Source: Phallusia mammillata (taxonomy: Eukaryota). From it: a stretch of 64,000 bases of DNA. Shown here piece after piece: positions 45,063 through 58,660 of the stretch. Below the pieces are notes generated by a model that saw only the letters and a list, made by a program, of their open reading frames with translations, ran no database searches and was not told where the DNA came from. Numbering within the stretch: position 1 is the stretch's first letter; each line of letters begins with the position of its first letter. A program made the translations under genes and the position numbers. Where the stretch lies: assembly GCA_965637545.1 (NCBI GenBank), contig OZ281495.1:22816001-22880000 (forward strand), in the 5' to 3' direction.

Positions 45063-46954
45063 ATGGATCCGTTTATGCTCGGATCGTCGTCAAAAGTAAA
45101 AACAGTTAGCAAGCACGTTTTTCACAGCCACAGCTATCAGAAGCCGACTTTCTGCGCCAACTGCAACAAGCTCCTTGTCGGATTGGCCAAGCAGGGATAT
45201 CAGTGCAAAAGTAAGTAGGCCTATATAACTTGGTAAACCTCGGTTAATCCGACCCGTTTGGACGAACAAATTGTCCGGATTAACCGATGTCGATTGGTTC
45301 AAGCCTTGCCACATTACAAATCATTTGTTCCTCGAGTTTTGTCCAAATTAGATCCGGATTAACCGAGGTTTACTGTATTACCAAATTGTATCTCATCCAA
45401 GTCATCATTTAGAAATTGGAAGTGCTTACGATTGCCAATTGTTTTCACTTGTTTGCACGTCTGGCCTTTTTACCTTCTTGCTGATGTAACAGTTGACCGA
45501 ATTAGGCTATATTACACAGACACATGCTTATGACCAACGAAGCAGGAAATGTTTTTAAGATTCAGTTACTTTCTGAAATAACTCACTAGAATTAATTTTC
45601 AAATCGTTCTGCAGGATGTGAAATAAACGTCCACAAGAAATGTCGAAAAGAAGTAGAAGACACTTGCATTGAAGTGGTAAGTTTTGTTGAGCTTGATTTG
45701 TTTGCATACCTCCGCATACCTACTTTACATTTGAAGATTGTTGGACACCATAACTTCCTTGCGAAAACATACACACACCCCACATTTTGTGATTTTTGCA
45801 ACAAACTGCTGGCTGGTGTTTTTCACCAAGGACTGCAATGTTCAGGTGAGCGTAGGAACCTGTCCATAAACGTTGCTTCCAAAAAATATATTCGACTTTG
45901 ATGTAACGACCATAAGCGCTCACAACAGAAAATTGTGTGATTCTAAACAAGTTTTGATTCTACATACTAAAGATTTTTTATACGTCGGTTGTATTACCTT
46001 TGCTAGTACATATTTTTCTTGGCAAAAAATTGCGTTAAGTTTTCATAAAACTTTGTTATGCACCTAAAACCGCAGCAGAAATATGCCTTTATCTGCTGAA
46101 ATGAACGTCTTCCAGGCATGTCAAATTGCAATATTACAATATTACTAAAACGACTTACTGTGTGTACAGAATGCGGATCCAATGTCCACGAAAAATGTCA
46201 AGAGAAAATCGAGGTGCAGTGCGCAATGACAAAGGAGAGACTTGAAACGGAGAAATCAAAACAGTCGCCGGCACAGGAAAGCAAACCCGGGTAAAAAAAT
46301 ACTGCCTGTGCGTTTTTAAATTTACATAACATCCTGCACATTTGAAAGTTACATTTTAAAAGAATCCAACAGCTTTTTATGTATCAGATATTCCAACGAT
46401 GAATTTACGTTCGAGAAGATGTCCTCAAGTCCGAAACTCAAACCCAAAGCTCAAAAAGAAGCCCAACAAGAAACGAAATTTGAAACAAGTAACAGTCCAA
46501 TAATAATATGGATATACCCTTCCTACTAAAATTTTACTGTTTCGTTATCAGTGGATCCAAGCCCTGTATTTAAAAAGCAAGAGATTCCTAATCCATCGGC
46601 CGATCAGGGCCTGTCAACCTCAACTCAGTCAAGTCCTGTGTTAAAGCCTAAACATTCACCAAAGGCTACAAGATATCAGCCACCACCGTCATACACAATG
46701 GTAATCAGGGTCTTATTGTATTCAAATATTACTGTACCGTATATGTTATGTTTGAAAAAAATCTCTCTTGATATTAGGACAGTGAATTAACTGATGATGA
46801 AAGAGCAAGGATCATCGCGGAAGAGATTGATCCACCACAGAAGATGCGTTTTTTAGAGAAGCACAGAAAATATGTTATAGCTTTGAGTGTTGCCATTTTG
46901 CTTTTGGTGGTTGTCCTTGCCACTGTACTAGCAATCGTACTAAAGAAAAAATGA
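45063..46954 (+). CDS. Tail-anchored tandem C1-domain protein (C1-C1-linker-PPxY-TM), 288 aa
   Basis: Exons 45063-45210, 45615-45676, 45737-45845, 46170-46290, 46388-46488, 46552-46700, 46778-46954 are in frame. C1[51 protein letters not shown]; C1[51 protein letters not shown]; QPPPSY; C-terminal [29 protein letters not shown]. Confidence 0.85.
45231..45375. mobile_element. Tc1/mariner (pogo/Tigger-like) MITE, copy 2
   Basis: GGTAAACCTCGGTTAATCCG ... CGGATTAACCGAGGTTTACTG|TA. It shares CCACATTACAAAT and TCGAGTTTTGTCC.AATTAG with copy 1 and lies in intron 1 of the tandem-C1 gene. Confidence 0.8.
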
Positions 46955-50973: not shown

Positions 50974-53439
50974 CTATGCAAAACAAGGGGTATAGAGGCG
51001 TTTAATTTGGGAAACATATTGGCTTAACAATAAATAAAGGATGACAAACCTGATGCGGTGGACTATATCGTTAGTGTAAATGGCTCACACAATTTAAACT
51101 TTCAGGGCTGTTAAACCTTTGAAATATTTTAAAGGATGTTGCTAATGGACATTTTGTATATACGCAAGTTATGTTTTACCGGCAGTTCATTAGTATTCCT
51201 AAACAGTTTTGTATTGGTCAAACGCCGTATAGCTGGAAGATGTTGGAAAAACGTATTGTAAAAAAACGTTTGTACCGCAACAGCTTGCATTCAGTGTAAC
51301 GTAGCCAATTTTGCCTTTAAAGTGTAAATGGAAGTTGTATTTGTGATTTTTCAACCGCGCGTTCTTATGCTACTGGCTCTGGTTGACATTATATGAACCT
51401 CAGTTTGCGGCCAATATAATAAACAGAAAATCAACTTTGAGCCGTTTAAACTTTAAAGTACTGCGGAAGTGGAACGCAACCTGTGCATAGAGTGCATTAT
51501 TTCGCCAGCAAAGGTCCAACAAACACATGAAACCGGTAGTTTTAGAAAAACCATTAATTACGTCCACAAAATGTTGACATCCTCTTTACTCCGGGAAGTA
51601 AACTCAATAGCTGCATAGCTACCGCGTTCAGGTTTGCCTTTGAGAGCAGTATTATACAACATACCATACAACTTTATGAACCAGACATTTCATATTGAAG
51701 TAATTTTGCGAGGGAAATCTTTGAAAAAACTTAGCATTTAGGAATGAATAAAGTGCTATATTTTGTAGTGATGACTTGTAGACAAACAAGCAGGTGTTGT
51801 TTTAGCGTTAACCTCTTGAAATATGAAGGGCTGCAGAGAAAACTCACTATCCGGAAGTGCACGAGTGCACTGTAGTGCATTTCGATATCTATTGTATCTG
51901 AGAGATAGTGAAAGATTTGTTGAAAGAAAGATAACAAGGAAAATCAATTTGTAAACGTCACCCTAGTTTTAGTTTCGTTATTGTAAGTGAAAGCTTGCAA
52001 GGAGAGTCATAAAACAATGTCAGCTTTGTTAAATTTAAGTCTGATCGCTGGTATCTGACCTGTCATTATAGACAGCATTAAAGAAATATCGGTAAAAATG
52101 CCGTGTTAAAACAACAGCATTTCGTTTCCAAAGTGCATTAAACCAAATCAGAAACAACCTACACACTAAACCACCTCCTCGGCCTTTTTCGCAAGCTTTG
52201 CCAAAAAATGTACCGCGCCAGTTATTTTGCATGAAGCCACGTTCGATCATCACTGCTTTAGCTTTTCAGCAAAGGTGAACACATTTTTTCAGGTGACGTA
52301 TTAGGGCTCTGACCACATGACTAAGGCAACGCGCTCCCTTATGAGGCCGTAAACAGCTGTGATGTCACCGAAGATATTCGCAGGAAAACTACATCGCATG
52401 TATTCTGGAGCGTTATTTGGAAAGTGCTAAGCAAACAGGTAAGTTCTGGAAATATTTGTTTTGTTCTACGGTGTAACAAAGTTTCTGTTTGAAAACTTCT
52501 CTCTAATATAGCTTTGTGCTGCTTGTTTGCTTACTAGCCATAGACAAACCGCGCTTGTCTGTTTTGAGGTGTCTAAGCCCAACAGATTCGCGAGTACAAG
52601 ATATTTTAGGCTTAAAATCAGCGAAAATCGTGCCCCTTAAGTGTACAACAGTTACAAATTACCTAAATTTGAGTACAATTTCATTTGTGCATAGAATTTG
52701 GTTAAATTCAGAGATTTGGGTTATCAGGCGACTTCTTTTGAGACGTTTCTTTAGCGTGGTGTGACGGTTTGTTGTTAAGGAAGTTAAACACAATGCCCCC
52801 ACTTCTCGTGTTCTGCCAAGGAATGGTTCCGAACGGTTAGACAATACCGAACCGCCTGTAGAAATTATTGGGAAGTAACCATGCACATTTACTGTATTAA
52901 GCTTAGGAGAAACAAATTTGCTTTGTATTCAGAGTGGATGAGAGTATAGTAGTGACGAGTTAGGCTATTTTGGTAAACTTTAAGATACAGCTCGCACAGC
53001 ATGCTGTGACGCCTGCATTATCGTGAACGACATCAACGTTTGTTTAAAGAAGGGTTCGGCAGTAACGGGCTTTTATAATGTCCCCAGGGAATTTATATTC
53101 AGTTGTAGTGATGCTTGTGAAATACCAGTTATTTTTGCAGCTTAACCTGACAGAACAACACTCTATGTTGGACTGTTACCCGTGATATATCTGATTTGCA
53201 TTTGGCATTATAAACAGCGTAGTCTAAACACCACGTACTTTACCAGTGAGATTTTAGTTATATGGAAGGCCCTACACAGATGTGCACTCATGTACTGTTT
53301 TTGAATCAATTTAAGGCCGTAGGCTGACTTTTATATACATTTAGCTACAATTTTCAACTGATATGAAAGGGTATAAAGTTTAAGTCGAAAAATGACGGCC
53401 ACAACTTTGGTTGTATATGCATTAAAAAAGTAGTAAATA

Positions 53440-56400
53440 ATGGTAAGTTAAAAGTTCACATCGTTTTGAATATCCGAAGTGCAAATGGTAGCACCGCTTG
53501 CAGTATTGTTGCGATTTTCAACAGACTGCTCTCTTTTGCAGTCAAATCCCTTTGAGGAGGAAGATACCCAAACAAATCCATTTCTACAAGAACAAACACC
53601 GAAATACGACACATTTGGGACGGATAACCCATTCGTGGACCGTACTGGCAAAGTTATGCAGTCTGTCAGTCAACATAAGTTTCAAGTGCACAACTACAAA
53701 CGACCGACGTTTTGTGAGCACTGCGGTGGACTGCTGGTGGGAGTTATCAAGCAAGGGCTGCGGTGCAAAAGTATGTTATTATGTTCATTTGCCTGTCCTA
53801 GACCGACAACAGTTTTTAATGACCATAGCACGCCAGGCCCAGTGAAGGCGTTATACCGAATCAAGTCAGTTTCCCAAGCATTCCCATATGTGTTCATCTT
53901 CGCAAATTTTAATGCTTGATTATCTGATCAACAGTTTGCTTGCAAAATTAGAATGCCTTCTACTGTTTCGACTCTTACATACATTGTTGCTCAACAGTTA
54001 AACGAATTCTTGCATGTGAGCTTGGTATGTTACAAGGCGTTAATGCCTACTAGAAATTTAGCGCGGTGCACACAGCTTGAAAGGAATTTGTCTTGGGGGC
54101 ATCGAATGTATTTGGTTTGTGCTAAAACATATGAATACGTGGTTATTGAATTGTTGTTGTGACCTCATGAAAAAGCATTTTTCGGCAGCAAGTTTTGTTG
54201 CACAGTTCGATTAACGTTTTCCGCTTCGCAGGGTGCGAGACCGACGTGCACGAAAAATGCCAAGAAGATTTAAAGAAAAATTGCATAGAAGTGGTGAGTA
54301 AGTATGTTTACCGCTAACCTCAAATGAGCAGCAATGGAATTTTTCCTGCAGTTTTTACATTCAATAAGTCCCCAGGGACTAGGGGAATGGAAAATGGGAC
54401 CACATTATTTATAATTTATTAGAAGTTGGTTAAGCACCCACTGTATTTACATGTTTGTTTTGTTAGATCGTTGGTAACCACAACTTTCGGGAGAGAACAT
54501 ACAAACAGCCAACATTCTGCGACTTCTGCGGCAAAATGCTTGTCGGGGTCGTGAACCAGGGAATGAAATGCTCAGGTAAGCAACCACACAAGCATCCACA
54601 ATATTTTTTTCTCCTATTTTTATGTACTGCTTTGTGCAACAATAAAACCTTTGTGTTGGTATGAAACGGTAATACTGCAAACGAGTGGTCAAACCTATAT
54701 AAAACTACATATTTAAGCCACTAATAGCAGTAGTAACAATCCATAACATGCATTTCCGTTGCCAAGTTGTTTGCTTGTAAGCAGAAGGCCAATTAGATGT
54801 TCTGTGTCAAAAAGTTACCTCCACAACTGTGTTAAACAGGAAAGACAAACAAAATCAATGCTCGTCTGTCGCTGGGTGTAAAACCATCCATTAGATTTTC
54901 GTTTTCGTATGTTGGCGGCGTGCCAAGCCTTGTTGATTGGCATAACGGCTACAATAATGGGAAGGAAACGCGTGAGCTCGGTGGCTTGGCATATCAAACG
55001 CACACGGCTTGCGATAAGCAACAAGTCGACTTTAGAAGGCCCCCGGCTACAATAGACAGCGACCGCTTTTGTTATAGTCGTATTAGCACTGTCATATATG
55101 GTCCATGTCGCTTTCTTATTAAAAAACGTTGTCTTGCGAAATATAACTTTAGCGAACGGTTACTGTAGAGATGGGATGAACGTGACAGTGGACTGCTGTG
55201 TTCTATGCTATACAGGCACGACCGTTGCAACTGCGTTGACGGTGCCACAGGAGGTTATTGCGCAGTTTGCGGTAAGCGGGATGAAGCCCTTCCCATGTGC
55301 ACCACGATAACGCGCTGTCACACAAATATAGGCGTTGGTTGCATAATGTTGCCATCGTTGCTGTTTATAAATGACTTCAATCCAGATAAAAGACGTAACT
55401 CGACACATGATCACAAAGCTTTTGGGATGTGGGGCAAAACAACACACAGATGGATTTATGGCAATATATTTGAACCAATAGCATAGTTTAACTTTCTCTT
55501 TGTTTTTCAGAGTGTGGTGCAAACGTTCACGAAAAGTGTCAAGACAAAATCGAACCCGAGTGTAAAAAGTGCAAGGACAAGCACGGAAAGAAACAAAAAA
55601 ATGCTCCAAGCGCACCAGCAAAAGAACTTACACCCGGGTGAGATATTAGTTGATCAATGCAGTAAATGAAAAAACTATATAATGTGCACTGGAGAAATAC
55701 TGAACAAACAAAACAAATTAATTTAAAAGTGACAGCGTGTTTAAACGACCTTAAAAAAGTGAAATGCACTATTATTAACACTTTATTTATTTAAGACTTT
55801 TCAGAAGCCCATTTATAGTTTAATTTCTATTAAACGAGATGACTATGTTAAGACACGTAACTGCAGCAGTACAGACAACCGTGCCGGCGGTGTGTCGGTT
55901 ATAGCATCTAGTTTTTGTGTTAAATAAAACCCACTTAGCCTACTAAATCGTTTTGTTAGAAATGTCATCATGCATATCATAGTTCAGTGAGCTGGCAGTT
56001 TGGCAAGGTGACGCTGCCACTTGTTTAGTCATGCCCCTGTTTCCGTATTCCCATTTCAACTGTGACGCGAGTCACAAACTGTGGTATGACGTTGTACAAC
56101 CGGTCGTCACATTATTTCCAACTATTATGAACCTTCATCAGTAGGATCGATGCCAAAAAATTAATCGATTACCTATTTAGGCCCTAGTTCACCCTAAAGG
56201 CTTGTGGGTAGGCAGAAATAATGTGTAACCATTTGGTTGCTTCCTATATAGTAGTTTTTGTAAAGAAAACCTGAACTTGGCTTAGGCTTTCAAGGGGCCG
56301 CGGATCGCGAAGAACTTTTCGTGGGCGCAACAATCCAAATAAACCTGACGACAAACTATCATTCGCCACTATGGACGAGTTGGAAGAAAGTGAGACAAAA

Positions 56401-57656
56401 GAAAACGAAGGTATTCAACGAGCATTAAAGTATTTCCGTGTAATTGCCAAATTTACATTTGTTTCACTGCTCATATAAGTACTGGTGTAAGTCAGCGCAA
56501 CAAAGATAGGGATTACAACGTTTGTTTGTGTGGATATATGGGCGTGTTGTTTTTCCAATACCTAAAGTTCATGTTAAGGCCAAGGCATTAAAAATGGGAT
56601 TCAAATAAAGCATGTAGCTCCATGCCAAAACCACCCAAATATGTCCCTTTTTCCAATACAGATACCCATTTTGTGCTTGATTTTTTACGATCTTAATAAC
56701 AAAGCGTGTTATATAACTCTATTTGGTTCCCAACCTGGGTTTTACCTTAAGGTTTATTTTACGTGTCCGTTGGGTAAATTTATAAAAGGTTTGTTACTAC
56801 AAAGGGTTGAAAACCACTGTTAAACGATGCTATTACAGATCCCGATGGAACAACGCTGTTTGCGCCAATACACGAAAAAGCAGGAACATCATCGCCTAAA
56901 CGCAGCCTGAGCCCGGTTCCCTCAAACAACCAACCGTCGTCAAGCCAACAAGTATCATCCTCTTCGGGTCAGACTCAAAGCAACGCGAACCTTGAGCAAA
57001 TGGACGCAGCGGTTCGTAATAGTAACTAAACAACCTAAGTCAGGGGTCCGTTATCGTTTTATGCCATTAACTCCTCGGCCTCGTTTTCCGTAACATACTG
57101 TCCCAAGAACTGTTGCAAACACTAAATATATGTAGGTGCCTGTTTGTAAAGAGTATGTCACTGACGTGACATTGTAAACATAATTCAAATCCAAATGCAC
57201 TGTTAATACGGCGCAAATTTTAGCTAAATTTTTTAAACAACTGCTTTCTAGGTGCAAAAAGTTGTGGAAATTATGCACGACAATACAAAGACCTTGGCCG
57301 ATCGAGGAAACAAGCTGGACGACTTACAAGTAGGCAACACTGGTTGTTTTGTATGTTATGTTGTAAATTTTCTCATTCATTTTTTCTCGTGAATCCAACA
57401 AATTGTGTGGTTTTATAGCTTTGTGATTTTTGTTGCGTCTTACATATTTTCAACCTTGCCGATGTTTTTTATTTAGGACAAATCAGAGAAGCTTAAAGAA
57501 AACGCAAGTATTTTTGAGAAAAAAACTACCGAAATCCGTCGAAAGTTCTGGTTAAAAAACAAGAAAATGTGGATTATCCTTGGAGTGGCGCTCGTCTTAC
57601 TTATAATTATCATCGTGGTTGCAGTGGTTTTTGCCAACAAGAAAAAAACACATTGA
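53440..57656 (+). CDS. NPF-C1-C1-synaptobrevin (R-SNARE/VAMP) fusion protein, 361 aa
   Basis: Exons 53440-53442 (ATG|gtaagt), 53542-53770, 54232-54293, 54467-54575, 55511-55637, 56286-56410, 56839-57011, 57252-57329, 57477-57656 form one uninterrupted frame. It encodes 3x NPF, two canonical 50-aa C1 domains, then [74 protein letters not shown] + TM, which aligns without gaps to VAMP2 as recalled. Confidence 0.88.
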
Positions 57657-58660
57657 CCATTTGGAAGGCAATTTTCAACTTGGAACCGCCTCGTAATCAA
57701 ACTTTGGTGACGTGTGCACAAAATCTTTGTTACCAACACGTATCACGTTTTTGTAACGACTAAAAATATTTTATAATTTGCATCGCAAAAATAGCGATAC
57801 GTGATTTTTCAGTGGTTATTGCATGCCCCACTTGCTCCCATATTAAAATTTGGTGATTGTGGGGTTCTATGAATTATACAGCCTCTACTTTTACTTCATT
57901 TTAACTGTTATCCACCTATGTTTAGGACCCTTGTTAACATTTTTTTTGTTTTTGGTCGTTGCAAATTGTTTTTTTTTTTCTATCTTTAGAAACATTTTGT
58001 TCTAGTCGCAAGTTCGCTTTGGGGCAAATGTTTTTAATGAACTAGTCGGTGTGTTATTGCCACGAGCTATTTGCGGTTTTATTGTACTCGATCATTTGTT
58101 GGTATTTTGCTCAAAGCGTTGTTTTTTATTTACTTCTTTGTACATACAACCACACTATAGGCATTGGGTAAGTGACGGGCCAATGACGATTTGGTAACAG
58201 TGCAATAATTGTATTCGGGATGGTTATTTTATACCTTTTAGCGTATTCAGTTTCTCAAGATAAACCGAAATAAAACCAATTCAAAAGAATTTTGTACGAT
58301 TTAAAAAGACCCTTTCCCGAGCAAAGAATATATGGAACTTAGAAGGTGTTAATCACCCAGTTAACACATCATTACAAAAATGCTAGTTTTTCTATTAATT
58401 TTTTTACATTTTTTGAAAACAGGACGTTACTGGTTGATGCTTCCTGCTTTGTTGCACAAAACTTGGTTCAAAACTATGTTGTTTTAGGGTGCAATTTAGG
58501 CCAATATGAACTTCAAACATGTCATACGTTTTCTGCAAAGTTCAAGTCAATATTTTCACAGTATATGCCTTATAAGCCTTCATTAGAAACTAAAATGAGC
58601 CTACATGTAACTTATAAATTAAGAAACTAAGAAACTTGTGAGTAGTTGGACACGACATTG

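What the first reader, a model, noticed from the sequence alone, without database searches (positions are those of the whole stretch)
53440..57656. Synaptobrevin fused to tandem typical C1 domains and three NPF motifs: a putative DAG-sensing v-SNARE
Seen in sequence: nine phase-consistent exons give one 361-aa protein with the order NPF x3, C1A, C1B, linker, R-SNARE motif, TM. Both C1 domains have the full HX12CX2CX13CX2CX4HX2CX7C pattern plus Pro11, Gly23 and Gln27 and a hydrophobic rim. The SNARE helix keeps the zero-layer Arg (LADRGNKL) and the basic/aromatic juxtamembrane segment ([10 protein letters not shown]). Established: those C1 residues characterise DAG/phorbol-binding C1 domains (PKC, Munc13), NPF binds EH domains (endocytic adaptors), and the R-SNARE N-terminal extensions I know are longin (VAMP7, Sec22, Ykt6) or WD40 (tomosyn). 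I do not know a C1-bearing VAMP. Inference: lipid second-messenger sensing and endocytic recycling are built directly into a fusion protein, a role Munc13 C1 supplies in trans; possibly for gamete or cortical-granule type exocytosis.
Basis: partly seen in the sequence, partly recalled or inferred. Interest (0 to 1): 0.9.

Follow-up and report, generated by a model that had tools for sequence, protein, structure and literature searches.

The report
C1-domain synaptobrevin of sea squirts
This is a real, expressed gene for a vesicle-fusion protein (a synaptobrevin-type SNARE) that carries two protein-kinase-C-type lipid-sensor (C1) domains and endocytic NPF motifs; this combination turned up only in sea squirts and their kin, and no paper describing it turned up.

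Summary
Nine GT..AG exons (53440-57656, + strand) give a 361-aa protein: three NPF motifs, two full-pattern C1 domains, a 116-aa low-complexity linker, a complete R-SNARE motif (zero-layer Arg294) and a C-terminal membrane anchor. One spliced 1272-nt public contig crosses all eight junctions from 5'UTR to 3'UTR, so the C1 and SNARE exons lie on one assembled transcript.

It is not unique. The same architecture occurs in Ciona intestinalis, C. savignyi, Clavelina lepadiformis and Styela clava (two copies), and in unnamed transcriptome, metatranscriptome and metagenome contigs. All carry only automatic names ("uncharacterized", "PKC-like"). Searches of 5.8 billion proteins found it in no named non-tunicate, and full-text searches found no paper on it.

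The C1 domains are the best conserved part (80-88% identity to Ciona and Styela A) and keep Pro11, Gly23, Gln27 and Gly28. Position 22 is Val across the fusion proteins, where PKC has Trp or Tyr. The SNARE core layers match VAMP2.

DAG sensing and EH-domain binding remain inference. The gamete or cortical-granule idea has no support. A SNARE-less tandem paralogue lies at 45063-46954. The scan had not noted this architecture on other DNA.

Verdict: a new variant of a known kind, restricted to tunicates as far as these searches show.

The parts
53394..53442 (+). Exon 1: 5'UTR (at least 49 nt) plus the ATG start codon (53440-53442)
   Evidence: The X10 contig carries 49 letters upstream of the joint 53441>53541. 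An in-frame TAA lies two codons upstream (53434-53436). The N-terminus MSNPFE matches Styela MSNPFE and Ciona MTNPFE.
53542..53770 (+). Exon 2: three NPF motifs (53545-53553, 53575-53583, 53626-53634) and the N-terminal 32 residues of C1A (from 53674)
   Evidence: C1_1, 37.7 bits. The joints at both ends are seen in X5, X6 and X10.
54232..54293 (+). Exon 3: C-terminal part of C1A
   Evidence: C1_1 profile positions 34-51; joints.
54467..54575 (+). Exon 4: N-terminal part of C1B (from 54479)
   Evidence: C1_1, 41.6 bits. The best solved match is PKC beta/delta C1B.
55511..55637 (+). Exon 5: C-terminal part of C1B (to 55563) and the lysine-rich start of the linker
56286..56410 (+). Exon 6: linker with the conserved basic patch ([13 protein letters not shown]) and acidic patch (MDELEESE)
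   Evidence: Family alignment; joints.
56839..57011 (+). Exon 7: Ser/Pro-rich linker with the conserved LF-x-P/MP-x-K motif, and SNARE layers -7 and -6
   Evidence: The joint 57010>57251 is seen in X6 and X10.
57252..57329 (+). Exon 8 (78 nt, phase 0-0): SNARE layers -5 to +2, including zero-layer Arg294 (57303-57305)
   Evidence: Synaptobrevin profile 12-37; layer table; joints.
57477..57656 (+). Exon 9: SNARE layers +3 to +8, juxtamembrane [10 protein letters not shown], membrane anchor (57567-57635), 6-residue lumenal tail and stop. The 3'UTR runs on to at least 57795.
   Evidence: Synaptobrevin, 54.4 bits, profile 38-88. The X10 contig reaches 57795.
45063..46954 (+). Tandem paralogue (7 coding exons, 288 aa): C1A-C1B-linker-PPPSY-membrane anchor. 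The two C1 introns are placed as in the SNARE gene, but there is no equivalent of exon 8 and no SNARE motif.
   Evidence: (no Synaptobrevin hit).

Best explanation
Shown: this is a real, spliced, expressed gene for a tail-anchored, longin-less (brevin-type) R-SNARE. Its cytoplasmic N-terminus carries three NPF motifs and a tandem of PKC-C1B-like C1 domains, joined to the SNARE motif by a 116-residue low-complexity linker. Every named member of the gene family is an ascidian.

Inferred mechanism:
- The protein sits in the membrane of an exocytic or recycling carrier and forms four-helix SNARE complexes through an intact VAMP2-like core.
- The C1 pair binds diacylglycerol-containing membrane. 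This could happen in trans: the long linker would let the pair reach the target membrane, so that carriers are captured and primed where phospholipase C has made DAG. That is the job Munc13's C1 domain does in trans, and its logic resembles the vesicle-anchored tandem C2 domains of synaptotagmin. It could instead happen in cis, at DAG-rich donor membrane, for sorting.
- The acid-flanked NPF motifs recruit EH-domain proteins (EHD/RME-1 type, possibly Eps15 or intersectin) to retrieve and recycle the SNARE after fusion.
For: Gene and transcript: the exon model and translation. All eight GT..AG joints are in public spliced contigs, and one 1272-nt contig spans them all.

Domains: Pfam C1_1 twice and Synaptobrevin.

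SNARE competence: all 16 layers are hydrophobic or small, as in VAMP2, and the zero-layer Arg is invariant in every fusion protein. The best solved relative is VAMP2, aligned without gaps through the juxtamembrane region and membrane anchor.

C1: both domains have the exact zinc pattern plus Pro11, Gly23, Gln27 and Gly28. These are the four non-zinc residues that Katti et al. 2022 (PMC9110374) call strictly conserved in DAG-sensitive C1 domains. The best solved relatives are the phorbol/DAG-binding C1B domains of PKC beta, delta and theta. The C1 domains are the most conserved part of the protein, 80-88% identical to Ciona and Styela A against 36-43% for the SNARE motif.

NPF: NPF1 reads NPFEEED, like the EHD1-binding NPFEEEEED of MICAL-L1. 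The Qbc-SNARE SNAP29 is a precedent for a SNARE that binds EHD1 through an NPF (review PMC13282721). Three NPFs recur in Ciona intestinalis isoform X1 and in the genomic orthologue on L002, and one recurs in Styela.

Family: the same architecture is found in four named ascidians and in further contigs.
Against: - No binding or fusion data exist.
- Position 22 of both C1 domains is Val across the fusion proteins (Leu in the C1A of the L002 orthologue), where PKC has Trp or Tyr. That residue completes the hydrophobic cage and sets DAG sensitivity. Position 9 is Lys.
- C1B has lost Pro11 in Clavelina and in the second Styela copy.
- NPF motifs are absent from the Clavelina models, and the X2 isoforms of three species start after them.
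- The solvent-exposed residues of the SNARE helix are poorly conserved.
- A SNARE-less paralogue shows that the C1-C1-anchor chassis can persist without a fusion function.
- The AlphaFold model was of low confidence apart from the SNARE/anchor helix.
- Cell type and compartment are unknown.
Confidence: 0.55

Rival explanations
1. The C1 pair is not a lipid second-messenger sensor. It is a zinc-finger module that works through protein contacts, for example by folding back on the SNARE motif as longin or Habc domains do, or by binding a GTPase or coat. The protein is then a regulated SNARE that is blind to DAG.
For: Val replaces the aromatic residue at position 22 in both domains across the fusion proteins. 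Lys/Arg or Lys/Gln sit at loop positions 9-10. Pro11 is lost from C1B in two members. Vav1 shows that an intact pocket does not guarantee phorbol binding (PMC2427238). The very high C1 conservation would also fit a conserved protein partner.
Against: All four strictly conserved DAG-contact residues are kept in both domains of the window protein and in every C1A of the family. Positions 13, 20, 21, 24 and 25 stay hydrophobic. The nearest solved relatives are genuine phorbol-binding C1B domains, not Raf/KSR/Vav-type atypical ones.
Confidence: 0.27
2. The main job of the family is membrane tethering or sorting through a C1-C1 module on a tail anchor. The SNARE motif is secondary, giving a non-fusogenic, inhibitory or merely targeting helix rather than a dedicated v-SNARE.
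For: The tandem paralogue keeps C1A, C1B, the linker and the anchor but has no SNARE motif, and by word share in RNA runs it looks expressed. The C1 domains are far better conserved than the SNARE helix. Exon 8 is a symmetric 78-nt exon, so skipping it would give an in-frame SNARE-dead isoform.
Against: All 16 core layers and the zero-layer Arg are kept in every fusion-type member across deep ascidian divergences, and so is the basic/aromatic juxtamembrane segment. This argues for selection on SNARE complex formation. No exon-8-skipped contig was seen.
Confidence: 0.15
3. The fusion is an artefact: two neighbouring genes (a C1 protein and a VAMP) joined by a wrong gene model, by read-through or by a chimeric assembly.
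For: Short-read contigs can in principle chain exons of overlapping transcripts. The run with the full contig has no recorded library type.
Against: Every junction between the C1 part and the SNARE part (55637>56286, 56410>56839, 57011>57252, 57329>57477) is seen in two or three independent runs. No start codon or stop interrupts the frame. The same colinear architecture occurs in independent annotations of four species, in intron-free transcript contigs (L001, L006) and in a second genomic locus with the same exon order.
Confidence: 0.02

Closest known systems
Synaptobrevin-2/VAMP2 and the other short 'brevin' R-SNAREs (VAMP1-4, 8; yeast Snc1)
   Same: It has the Pfam Synaptobrevin domain and 16 layers whose core residues largely match VAMP2, with Arg at the zero layer. 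The basic/aromatic juxtamembrane segment, single C-terminal anchor and short lumenal tail are also shared. VAMP2 is the best solved match (61.5 bits); VAMP4, VAMP8 and Snc1 follow.
   Different: Brevins have only a short unstructured N-terminus. Here about 270 residues precede the SNARE motif, holding NPF motifs, two C1 domains and a long linker. The exposed helix surface is divergent. The subfamily (VAMP2/3-, 4- or 8-like) could not be resolved.
C1A-C1B tandem of protein kinase C (the C1B domains of PKC beta, delta and theta in particular)
   Same: The zinc pattern is identical, Pro11/Gly23/Gln27/Gly28 are kept, and the tandem aligns colinearly with PKC beta residues 38-152 (82 bits). Each domain scores best against PKC C1B.
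   Different: There is no pseudosubstrate, C2 or kinase domain, so the automatic names 'PKC-like' are wrong. Only 7 residues separate the two domains, against about 15 in PKC beta. Both domains look C1B-like (weakly). Position 22 is Val instead of Trp/Tyr.
Munc13 (C1-C2B-MUN-C2C priming factor)
   Same: It is a functional analogy only: a DAG/phorbol-type C1 domain placed so as to couple PLC signalling to SNARE-dependent fusion. Munc13-1 C1 is among the solved matches.
   Different: Munc13 is a large soluble protein that acts on syntaxin through its MUN domain and supplies C1 in trans. Here the C1 domains are part of the membrane-anchored R-SNARE itself, and there is no MUN or C2 domain.
NPF-bearing trafficking proteins that bind EH domains (MICAL-L1, Rabenosyn-5, the Qbc-SNARE SNAP29)
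   Same: NPF motifs lie in a disordered N-terminus. NPF1 is followed by an acidic cluster, as in the EHD1-binding motif of MICAL-L1. SNAP29 is a SNARE that uses an NPF to bind EHD1.
   Different: I found no R-SNARE with NPF motifs. The motifs here are untested and are not kept in every family member.
Longin R-SNAREs (VAMP7, Sec22, Ykt6) and tomosyn
   Same: They show the same general principle: an R-SNARE motif with a folded N-terminal regulatory domain.
   Different: The N-terminal fold is a longin or WD40 domain, not C1. Pfam finds no longin domain here. Tomosyn lacks a membrane anchor.

Membership tests
R-SNARE, synaptobrevin (brevin) type | Match to Pfam Synaptobrevin (PF00957) above the curated cut-off | tested here: met
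   Exon 9 alone scores 54.4 bits (cut-off 26.4). Exon 8 adds the adjoining profile positions 12-37. Orthologues score 80-96 bits.
R-SNARE, synaptobrevin (brevin) type | Sixteen heptad layers with Arg at the zero layer | tested here: met
   The layers read L M V V M N L R L L S L A F T I. The Arg is invariant in all fusion-type members, and the alignment to VAMP2 is ungapped.
R-SNARE, synaptobrevin (brevin) type | C-terminal membrane anchor directly after a basic/aromatic juxtamembrane segment; no longin domain | tested here: met
   [10 protein letters not shown] is followed by 23 hydrophobic residues and a 6-residue tail. There is no longin hit.
R-SNARE, synaptobrevin (brevin) type | Forms a four-helix complex with Qa/Qb/Qc SNAREs and drives fusion | not testable with these tools
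   Needs biochemistry.
Typical (DAG/phorbol-ester-responsive) C1 domain | HX12CX2CX13-14CX2CX4HX2CX7C zinc pattern | tested here: met
   Exact matches at aa 46-95 and 103-152.
Typical (DAG/phorbol-ester-responsive) C1 domain | Strictly conserved non-zinc residues Pro11, Gly23, Gln27, Gly28 (Katti et al. 2022) | tested here: met
   All four are present in both domains of the window protein and in every C1A of the family. Pro11 is Leu in the C1B of Clavelina and Styela B.
Typical (DAG/phorbol-ester-responsive) C1 domain | Hydrophobic cage: positions 13, 20, 22 (Trp/Tyr) and 24 | tested here: inconclusive
   Phe13, Leu/Met20 and Val24 are kept, but position 22 is Val across the fusion proteins. 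The effect on DAG affinity is unknown.
Typical (DAG/phorbol-ester-responsive) C1 domain | Binds phorbol ester or DAG in a membrane | not testable with these tools
   Needs a PDBu binding or translocation assay.
EH-domain ligands (NPF motif proteins) | NPF tripeptides in an accessible, disordered region, conserved among orthologues; an acidic flank for EHD-type EH domains | tested here: inconclusive
   There are three NPFs, the first as NPFEEED. Three are also present in Ciona X1 and in the L002 orthologue, one in Styela A, and none in the Clavelina models or in the X2 isoforms. The rule comes from the review read.
Protein kinase C (the automatic name of several orthologues) | Ser/Thr kinase domain C-terminal to the C1 domains | tested here: not met
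   The 361-aa protein has no kinase match. Only C1_1 and Synaptobrevin were found.
Munc13/UNC-13 | MUN domain and flanking C2 domains | tested here: not met
   No such Pfam hits. The resemblance is functional only.

The most novel reading that the evidence does not exclude
Tunicates have built a lipid-gated v-SNARE. The vesicle's own R-SNARE carries a tandem DAG sensor that tethers and primes the carrier at sites of phospholipase C signalling, or releases an autoinhibited SNARE motif there. It also carries EHD-type recycling signals. One polypeptide would then do what vertebrates split between VAMP, Munc13 C1 and adaptor proteins. The SNARE-less paralogue would be a pure DAG-dependent membrane tether derived from it.
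Probability: 0.35. Interest if true: 0.8.

Novelty: new variant of a known kind. Interest (0 to 1): 0.62.

Why it matters
The known regulatory N-terminal domains of SNAREs are few: Habc, longin, PX and WD40. A second-messenger lipid sensor fused directly to an R-SNARE would be a new way to couple receptor signalling to membrane fusion.

It would also be a natural experiment on how much of Munc13-type DAG control can be built into the fusogen itself. The gene occurs in Ciona, an experimentally tractable chordate, so the idea can be tested directly.

On the practical side, several database entries for this family are misnamed 'protein kinase C-like'.

Tried and rejected
1. Exon 7 ends at 57014 and 57015 were tried and rejected, because the frame or the splice consensus fails. 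The donor at 57011 is confirmed by the reads.

2. An AlphaFold2 run on the 7-sequence family alignment gave mean pLDDT 49. Only the SNARE/anchor helix (residues 251-340 of the Ciona protein) was confident, so no fold search was run.

3. A word-indexed search with the SNARE part alone returned nothing, so no named short VAMPs were available for a tree.

4. A tree of 101 SNARE motifs (69 columns) was unresolved. The fusion proteins cluster (3 changes against 8.7 in shuffles), but they could not be assigned to VAMP2/3, VAMP4 or VAMP8. The Atlas feature search leaned to VAMP8 for the SNARE part and to VAMP3/VAMP4 for the whole protein, both only at lead level.

5. A tree of single C1 domains (50 columns) put both family domains on the PKC-C1B side. 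This hints that a C1B-like unit was duplicated internally, but support is weak.

6. Seven full-text searches looked for C1 plus synaptobrevin/VAMP/R-SNARE in ascidians or Ciona, for tunicate SNARE domain architecture, and for the accession numbers of the orthologues. None found a description.

7. The whole 361-aa protein has no reference, so it was not sent to the search tools. Exon pieces and the Ciona orthologue P0151 stood in for it. The window's own protein was not in the protein collection.

8. A fused-gene artefact was considered and rejected (see the rival explanations).
Full report
**1. What is in the sequence**

I read 53000-58200 and assembled the proposed exons with a script. The model that keeps the frame and the GT..AG borders is:
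- 53440-53442 (ATG only)
- 53542-53770
- 54232-54293
- 54467-54575
- 55511-55637
- 56286-56410
- 56839-57011
- 57252-57329
- 57477-57656

This gives 1086 nt, that is 361 aa plus a stop. NPF motifs lie at residues 3, 13 and 30. Two exact HX12CX2CX13CX2CX4HX2CX7C patterns lie at residues 46-95 and 103-152. LADRGNKL carries Arg294. [10 protein letters not shown] is followed by a 23-residue hydrophobic anchor and a 6-residue tail.

Pfam confirms the domains on the exon pieces. C1_1 hits exons 2, 3, 4 and 5, and the two N-terminal halves alone are above the curated cut-off. Synaptobrevin hits exon 8 (profile 12-37) and exon 9 (profile 38-88, 54.4 bits).

**2. Is it one transcript?**

Public runs of the same organism hold the region. 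I laid four of them on 52400-58300, which is 5901 letters and within the operators' limit. All eight introns appeared as GT..AG joints. One 1272-nt contig of run X10 runs from 49 nt of 5'UTR in exon 1 through every exon to 57795 in the 3'UTR. Runs X5 and X6 confirm the junctions piecewise, including those that link the C1 part to the SNARE part.

Run X1 covers the introns evenly and shows no joints, so it carries unspliced RNA or DNA and adds nothing either way. An in-frame TAA lies two codons upstream of the ATG. The N-terminus MSNPFE recurs in Styela (MSNPFE) and Ciona (MTNPFE), so the ATG-only first coding exon is real.

**3. Relatives**

An exhaustive HMMER search with exon 9 found three long proteins among ordinary short VAMPs. 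Pfam shows that all three carry both C1_1 and Synaptobrevin. Word-indexed searches with one of them, and then with a 7-sequence profile, found eight clusters with both domains among 5.8 billion proteins:
- Ciona intestinalis, with isoform X1 (344 aa) and X2 (312 aa)
- C. savignyi
- Clavelina lepadiformis
- Styela clava, with two paralogues
- one transcript contig from a Logan assembly
- two contigs from a JGI sample whose organism is unknown

All source names are automatic: 'uncharacterized protein', 'Phorbol-ester/DAG-type domain-containing protein', or wrongly 'calcium-independent protein kinase C-like' and 'protein kinase C-like 1B'.

The next best hits are true novel-type PKCs that match only through their C1 domains. 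An 82-aa 'protein' from the first search proved to be the last exon of a further orthologue. It lies on 16-66 kb eukaryotic contigs filed among metagenomes. tblastn found all eight coding exons there, colinear and with three NPFs (SNPFEEE..., NPFLNP, NPFVDA).

The Atlas of large protein clusters has no cluster with the joint architecture. As far as these searches see, the family is small and restricted to tunicates. The window protein is 57% identical to Ciona X1, 52% to Styela A and 49% to Clavelina, so the window most probably comes from another ascidian. That last point is inference.

**4. The SNARE part**

All 16 layers are in place in the window protein (L M V V M N L R L L S L A F T I). 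The zero-layer Arg is invariant in every fusion-type member. The Ciona orthologue aligns with VAMP2 without a gap from layer -6 through the juxtamembrane segment and the anchor. Most core-layer residues are identical: V, V, M, N, R, L, L, A, L, A, F, A, L.

VAMP2 is the best solved match at 61.5 bits. On the soluble motif alone, VAMP2 (about 40 bits), VAMP4 (38) and VAMP8 (30) are close together. A 69-column tree could not place the family within the brevins. The Atlas features lean to VAMP8 for the SNARE part and to VAMP3/4 for the whole protein, at lead level only. I therefore file it as a longin-less, brevin-type R-SNARE of unresolved subfamily.

The exposed positions of the helix are poorly conserved, at 36-43% identity to other ascidians. 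This suggests that it does not face the dense set of partners that constrains neuronal synaptobrevin.

**5. The C1 part**

The tandem aligns colinearly with PKC beta C1A-C1B (82 bits). Taken singly, each domain scores higher against PKC C1B than against PKC C1A: 43.6 against 26.2 bits for C1A, and 36.9 against 23.2 bits for C1B. A 50-column tree puts both domains on the C1B side, though weakly.

Both domains are split by a phase-1 intron after residue 32, and they are 50% identical to each other. This fits an internal duplication of a two-exon C1B-like unit, which is inference.

Katti et al. 2022 (PMC9110374) name Pro241, Gly253, Gln257 and Gly258 of PKC delta C1B (positions 11, 23, 27 and 28) as strictly conserved in DAG-sensitive C1 domains. 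They name Leu250, Trp252 and Leu254 (positions 20, 22 and 24), together with Phe243 (position 13), as the hydrophobic cage. Both domains of the window protein have all four strict residues, plus Phe13, Leu/Met20 and Val24.

There are deviations:
- Position 22 is Val in the fusion proteins (LLVG), with Leu in the C1A of the L002 orthologue and Ala in the C1B of the paralogue. PKC has Trp or Tyr there, the residue whose identity tunes DAG affinity.
- Position 9 is Lys.
- C1B has lost Pro11 in Clavelina and in Styela B.

From memory, and not tested here: PKD C1b has Lys at position 22 and the phorbol-binding C1A domains of DGK beta and gamma have aliphatic residues there, so Val need not abolish binding.

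The C1 domains are by far the most conserved part of the protein (80-88% identity to Ciona and Styela A). Whatever they bind is central to the protein's function.

**6. N-terminus and linker**

The review PMC13282721 states three things:
- All EH domains bind NPF.
- The C-terminal EH domains of EHD proteins prefer NPF followed by acidic residues, such as NPFEEEEED in MICAL-L1.
- The SNARE SNAP29 binds EHD1 through its NPF.

The window's first motif is NPFEEED. The Ciona motifs are NPFEQEE, NPFEEDS and NPFEDEN. The reading as an EHD/RME-1-type recycling signal is thus better founded than 'endocytic adaptors' in general. It remains untested, and the motifs are missing from the Clavelina models and from the X2 isoforms that start at the internal Met.

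The 116-residue linker is rich in Ser, Lys and Pro. It holds three short blocks conserved across the family:
- a basic block ([13 protein letters not shown])
- an acidic block (MDELEESE)
- a hydrophobic-Phe-x-x-Met/Ile-Pro-x-Lys block, LFAPIHEK here and MFKTMPAK, IFESMPEK, LFAPMPSR or IFEKMPQK elsewhere

I have no explanation for these blocks.

**7. The neighbour**

I assembled it as seven coding exons and 288 aa. It has C1A and C1B with the same intron positions, a linker that keeps a weak version of the Phe block and has a PPPSY motif, and a membrane anchor. It has no equivalent of exon 8, a Pro-Pro in what remains of the helix, and no Synaptobrevin hit.

RNA runs hold 0.29-0.41 of its sampled words, about what a spliced mRNA would give. 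tblastn finds no third copy in the window.

The paralogue shows that the C1-C1-anchor chassis can be kept without a SNARE motif. Exon 8 of the main gene is a symmetric 78-nt exon. Both facts feed the second rival explanation.

**8. Mechanism**

Shown: the protein is tail-anchored, with the whole N-terminal part cytoplasmic, a fusion-competent-looking R-SNARE core, and two strongly conserved PKC-C1B-like domains about 140 residues upstream of the SNARE motif's zero layer.

Inferred: the C1 pair binds DAG-containing membrane.
- In trans, the long linker would let it reach the target membrane before the SNAREs zipper. This would give DAG-dependent capture or priming, which is functionally what Munc13's C1 contributes and topologically like the vesicle-anchored tandem C2 domains of synaptotagmin.
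- In cis, it could concentrate the SNARE in DAG-rich donor membrane.
- The NPFs would hand the used SNARE to EH-domain recycling machinery.

I put about 0.55 on this overall reading. That figure combines near-certainty for the gene and its architecture with roughly even odds for DAG binding. The rivals are a C1 pair that does not sense lipid (0.27), a protein that is mainly a tether or sorter with a secondary SNARE helix (0.15), and an artefact (0.02).

**9. Novelty**

Seven full-text searches of PubMed Central and bioRxiv found no description of a C1-bearing VAMP or of these accessions. About 1.7 million further PMC articles and the subscription journals are not covered by that search.

The proteins are in public databases with both domains flagged automatically, so the sequences themselves are not new. 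What appears undescribed is the architecture as a SNARE class. I rate it a new variant of a known kind. It would surprise SNARE specialists and can be tested in Ciona, but it is lineage-restricted and so far without functional data.

Noticed in passing
window 45063-46954 (+): A tandem paralogue of 288 aa with C1A-C1B-linker-PPPSY-membrane anchor and the same C1 intron positions. It lacks the exon 8 equivalent and any SNARE motif, and its N-terminus has DPF instead of NPF. RNA runs hold 0.29-0.41 of its sampled words.
   Followed up: partly
window 56286-57011 (linker exons 6-7): Three short blocks are conserved across the family inside an otherwise fast-evolving linker. They are a basic block [13 protein letters not shown] (a Thr flanked like a PKC-type site), an acidic block MDELEESE, and a Phe-x-x-Met/Ile-Pro-x-Lys block (LFAPIHEK here, MFKTMPAK in Ciona). 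I could not assign any of them to a known motif.
   Followed up: no
window 57252-57329: Exon 8 (SNARE layers -5 to +2, including the zero-layer Arg) is a symmetric phase 0-0 exon of 78 nt. Skipping it would give an in-frame SNARE-dead isoform resembling the paralogue. No such contig was seen in the four runs laid.
   Followed up: partly
window 53392-53436: The 5'UTR exon holds two short upstream ORFs, ATG at 53392 (13 codons) and ATG at 53417 (2 codons), ahead of the main ATG. It is uncertain whether the transcript includes the first one, because the contig begins near 53394.
   Followed up: no
window 53663 and 56891: Contig variants. C>T at 53663 in run X5 changes Ser42 to Phe, just before C1A. 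A>G at 56891 in run X10 is synonymous (Ser236). They are probably alleles.
   Followed up: partly
L002-L005 (ENA ERZ27241799; JGI 3300001463, 3300001539, 3300027611): Contigs of 16-66 kb filed as metagenome carry an intron-containing orthologue of this gene with the same exon order. They are therefore host (probably ascidian) genomic DNA, and the gene caller reported only the last exon as an 82-aa 'protein'.
   Followed up: partly
P0155 and P0156: Two unrelated C1 proteins from environmental data, one F-box/TPR/C1 and one kinase/C2/C1, also have LLVG (Val at C1 position 22). This variant is therefore not confined to the SNARE fusion family.
   Followed up: no
runs X1-X4 on window 52400-58300: Runs labelled 'RNA?' hold 50-80% of the sampled words. 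X1, the only one laid, covers the introns evenly without any splice joint. It contains unspliced RNA or genomic DNA and should not be used as evidence of expression.
   Followed up: partly
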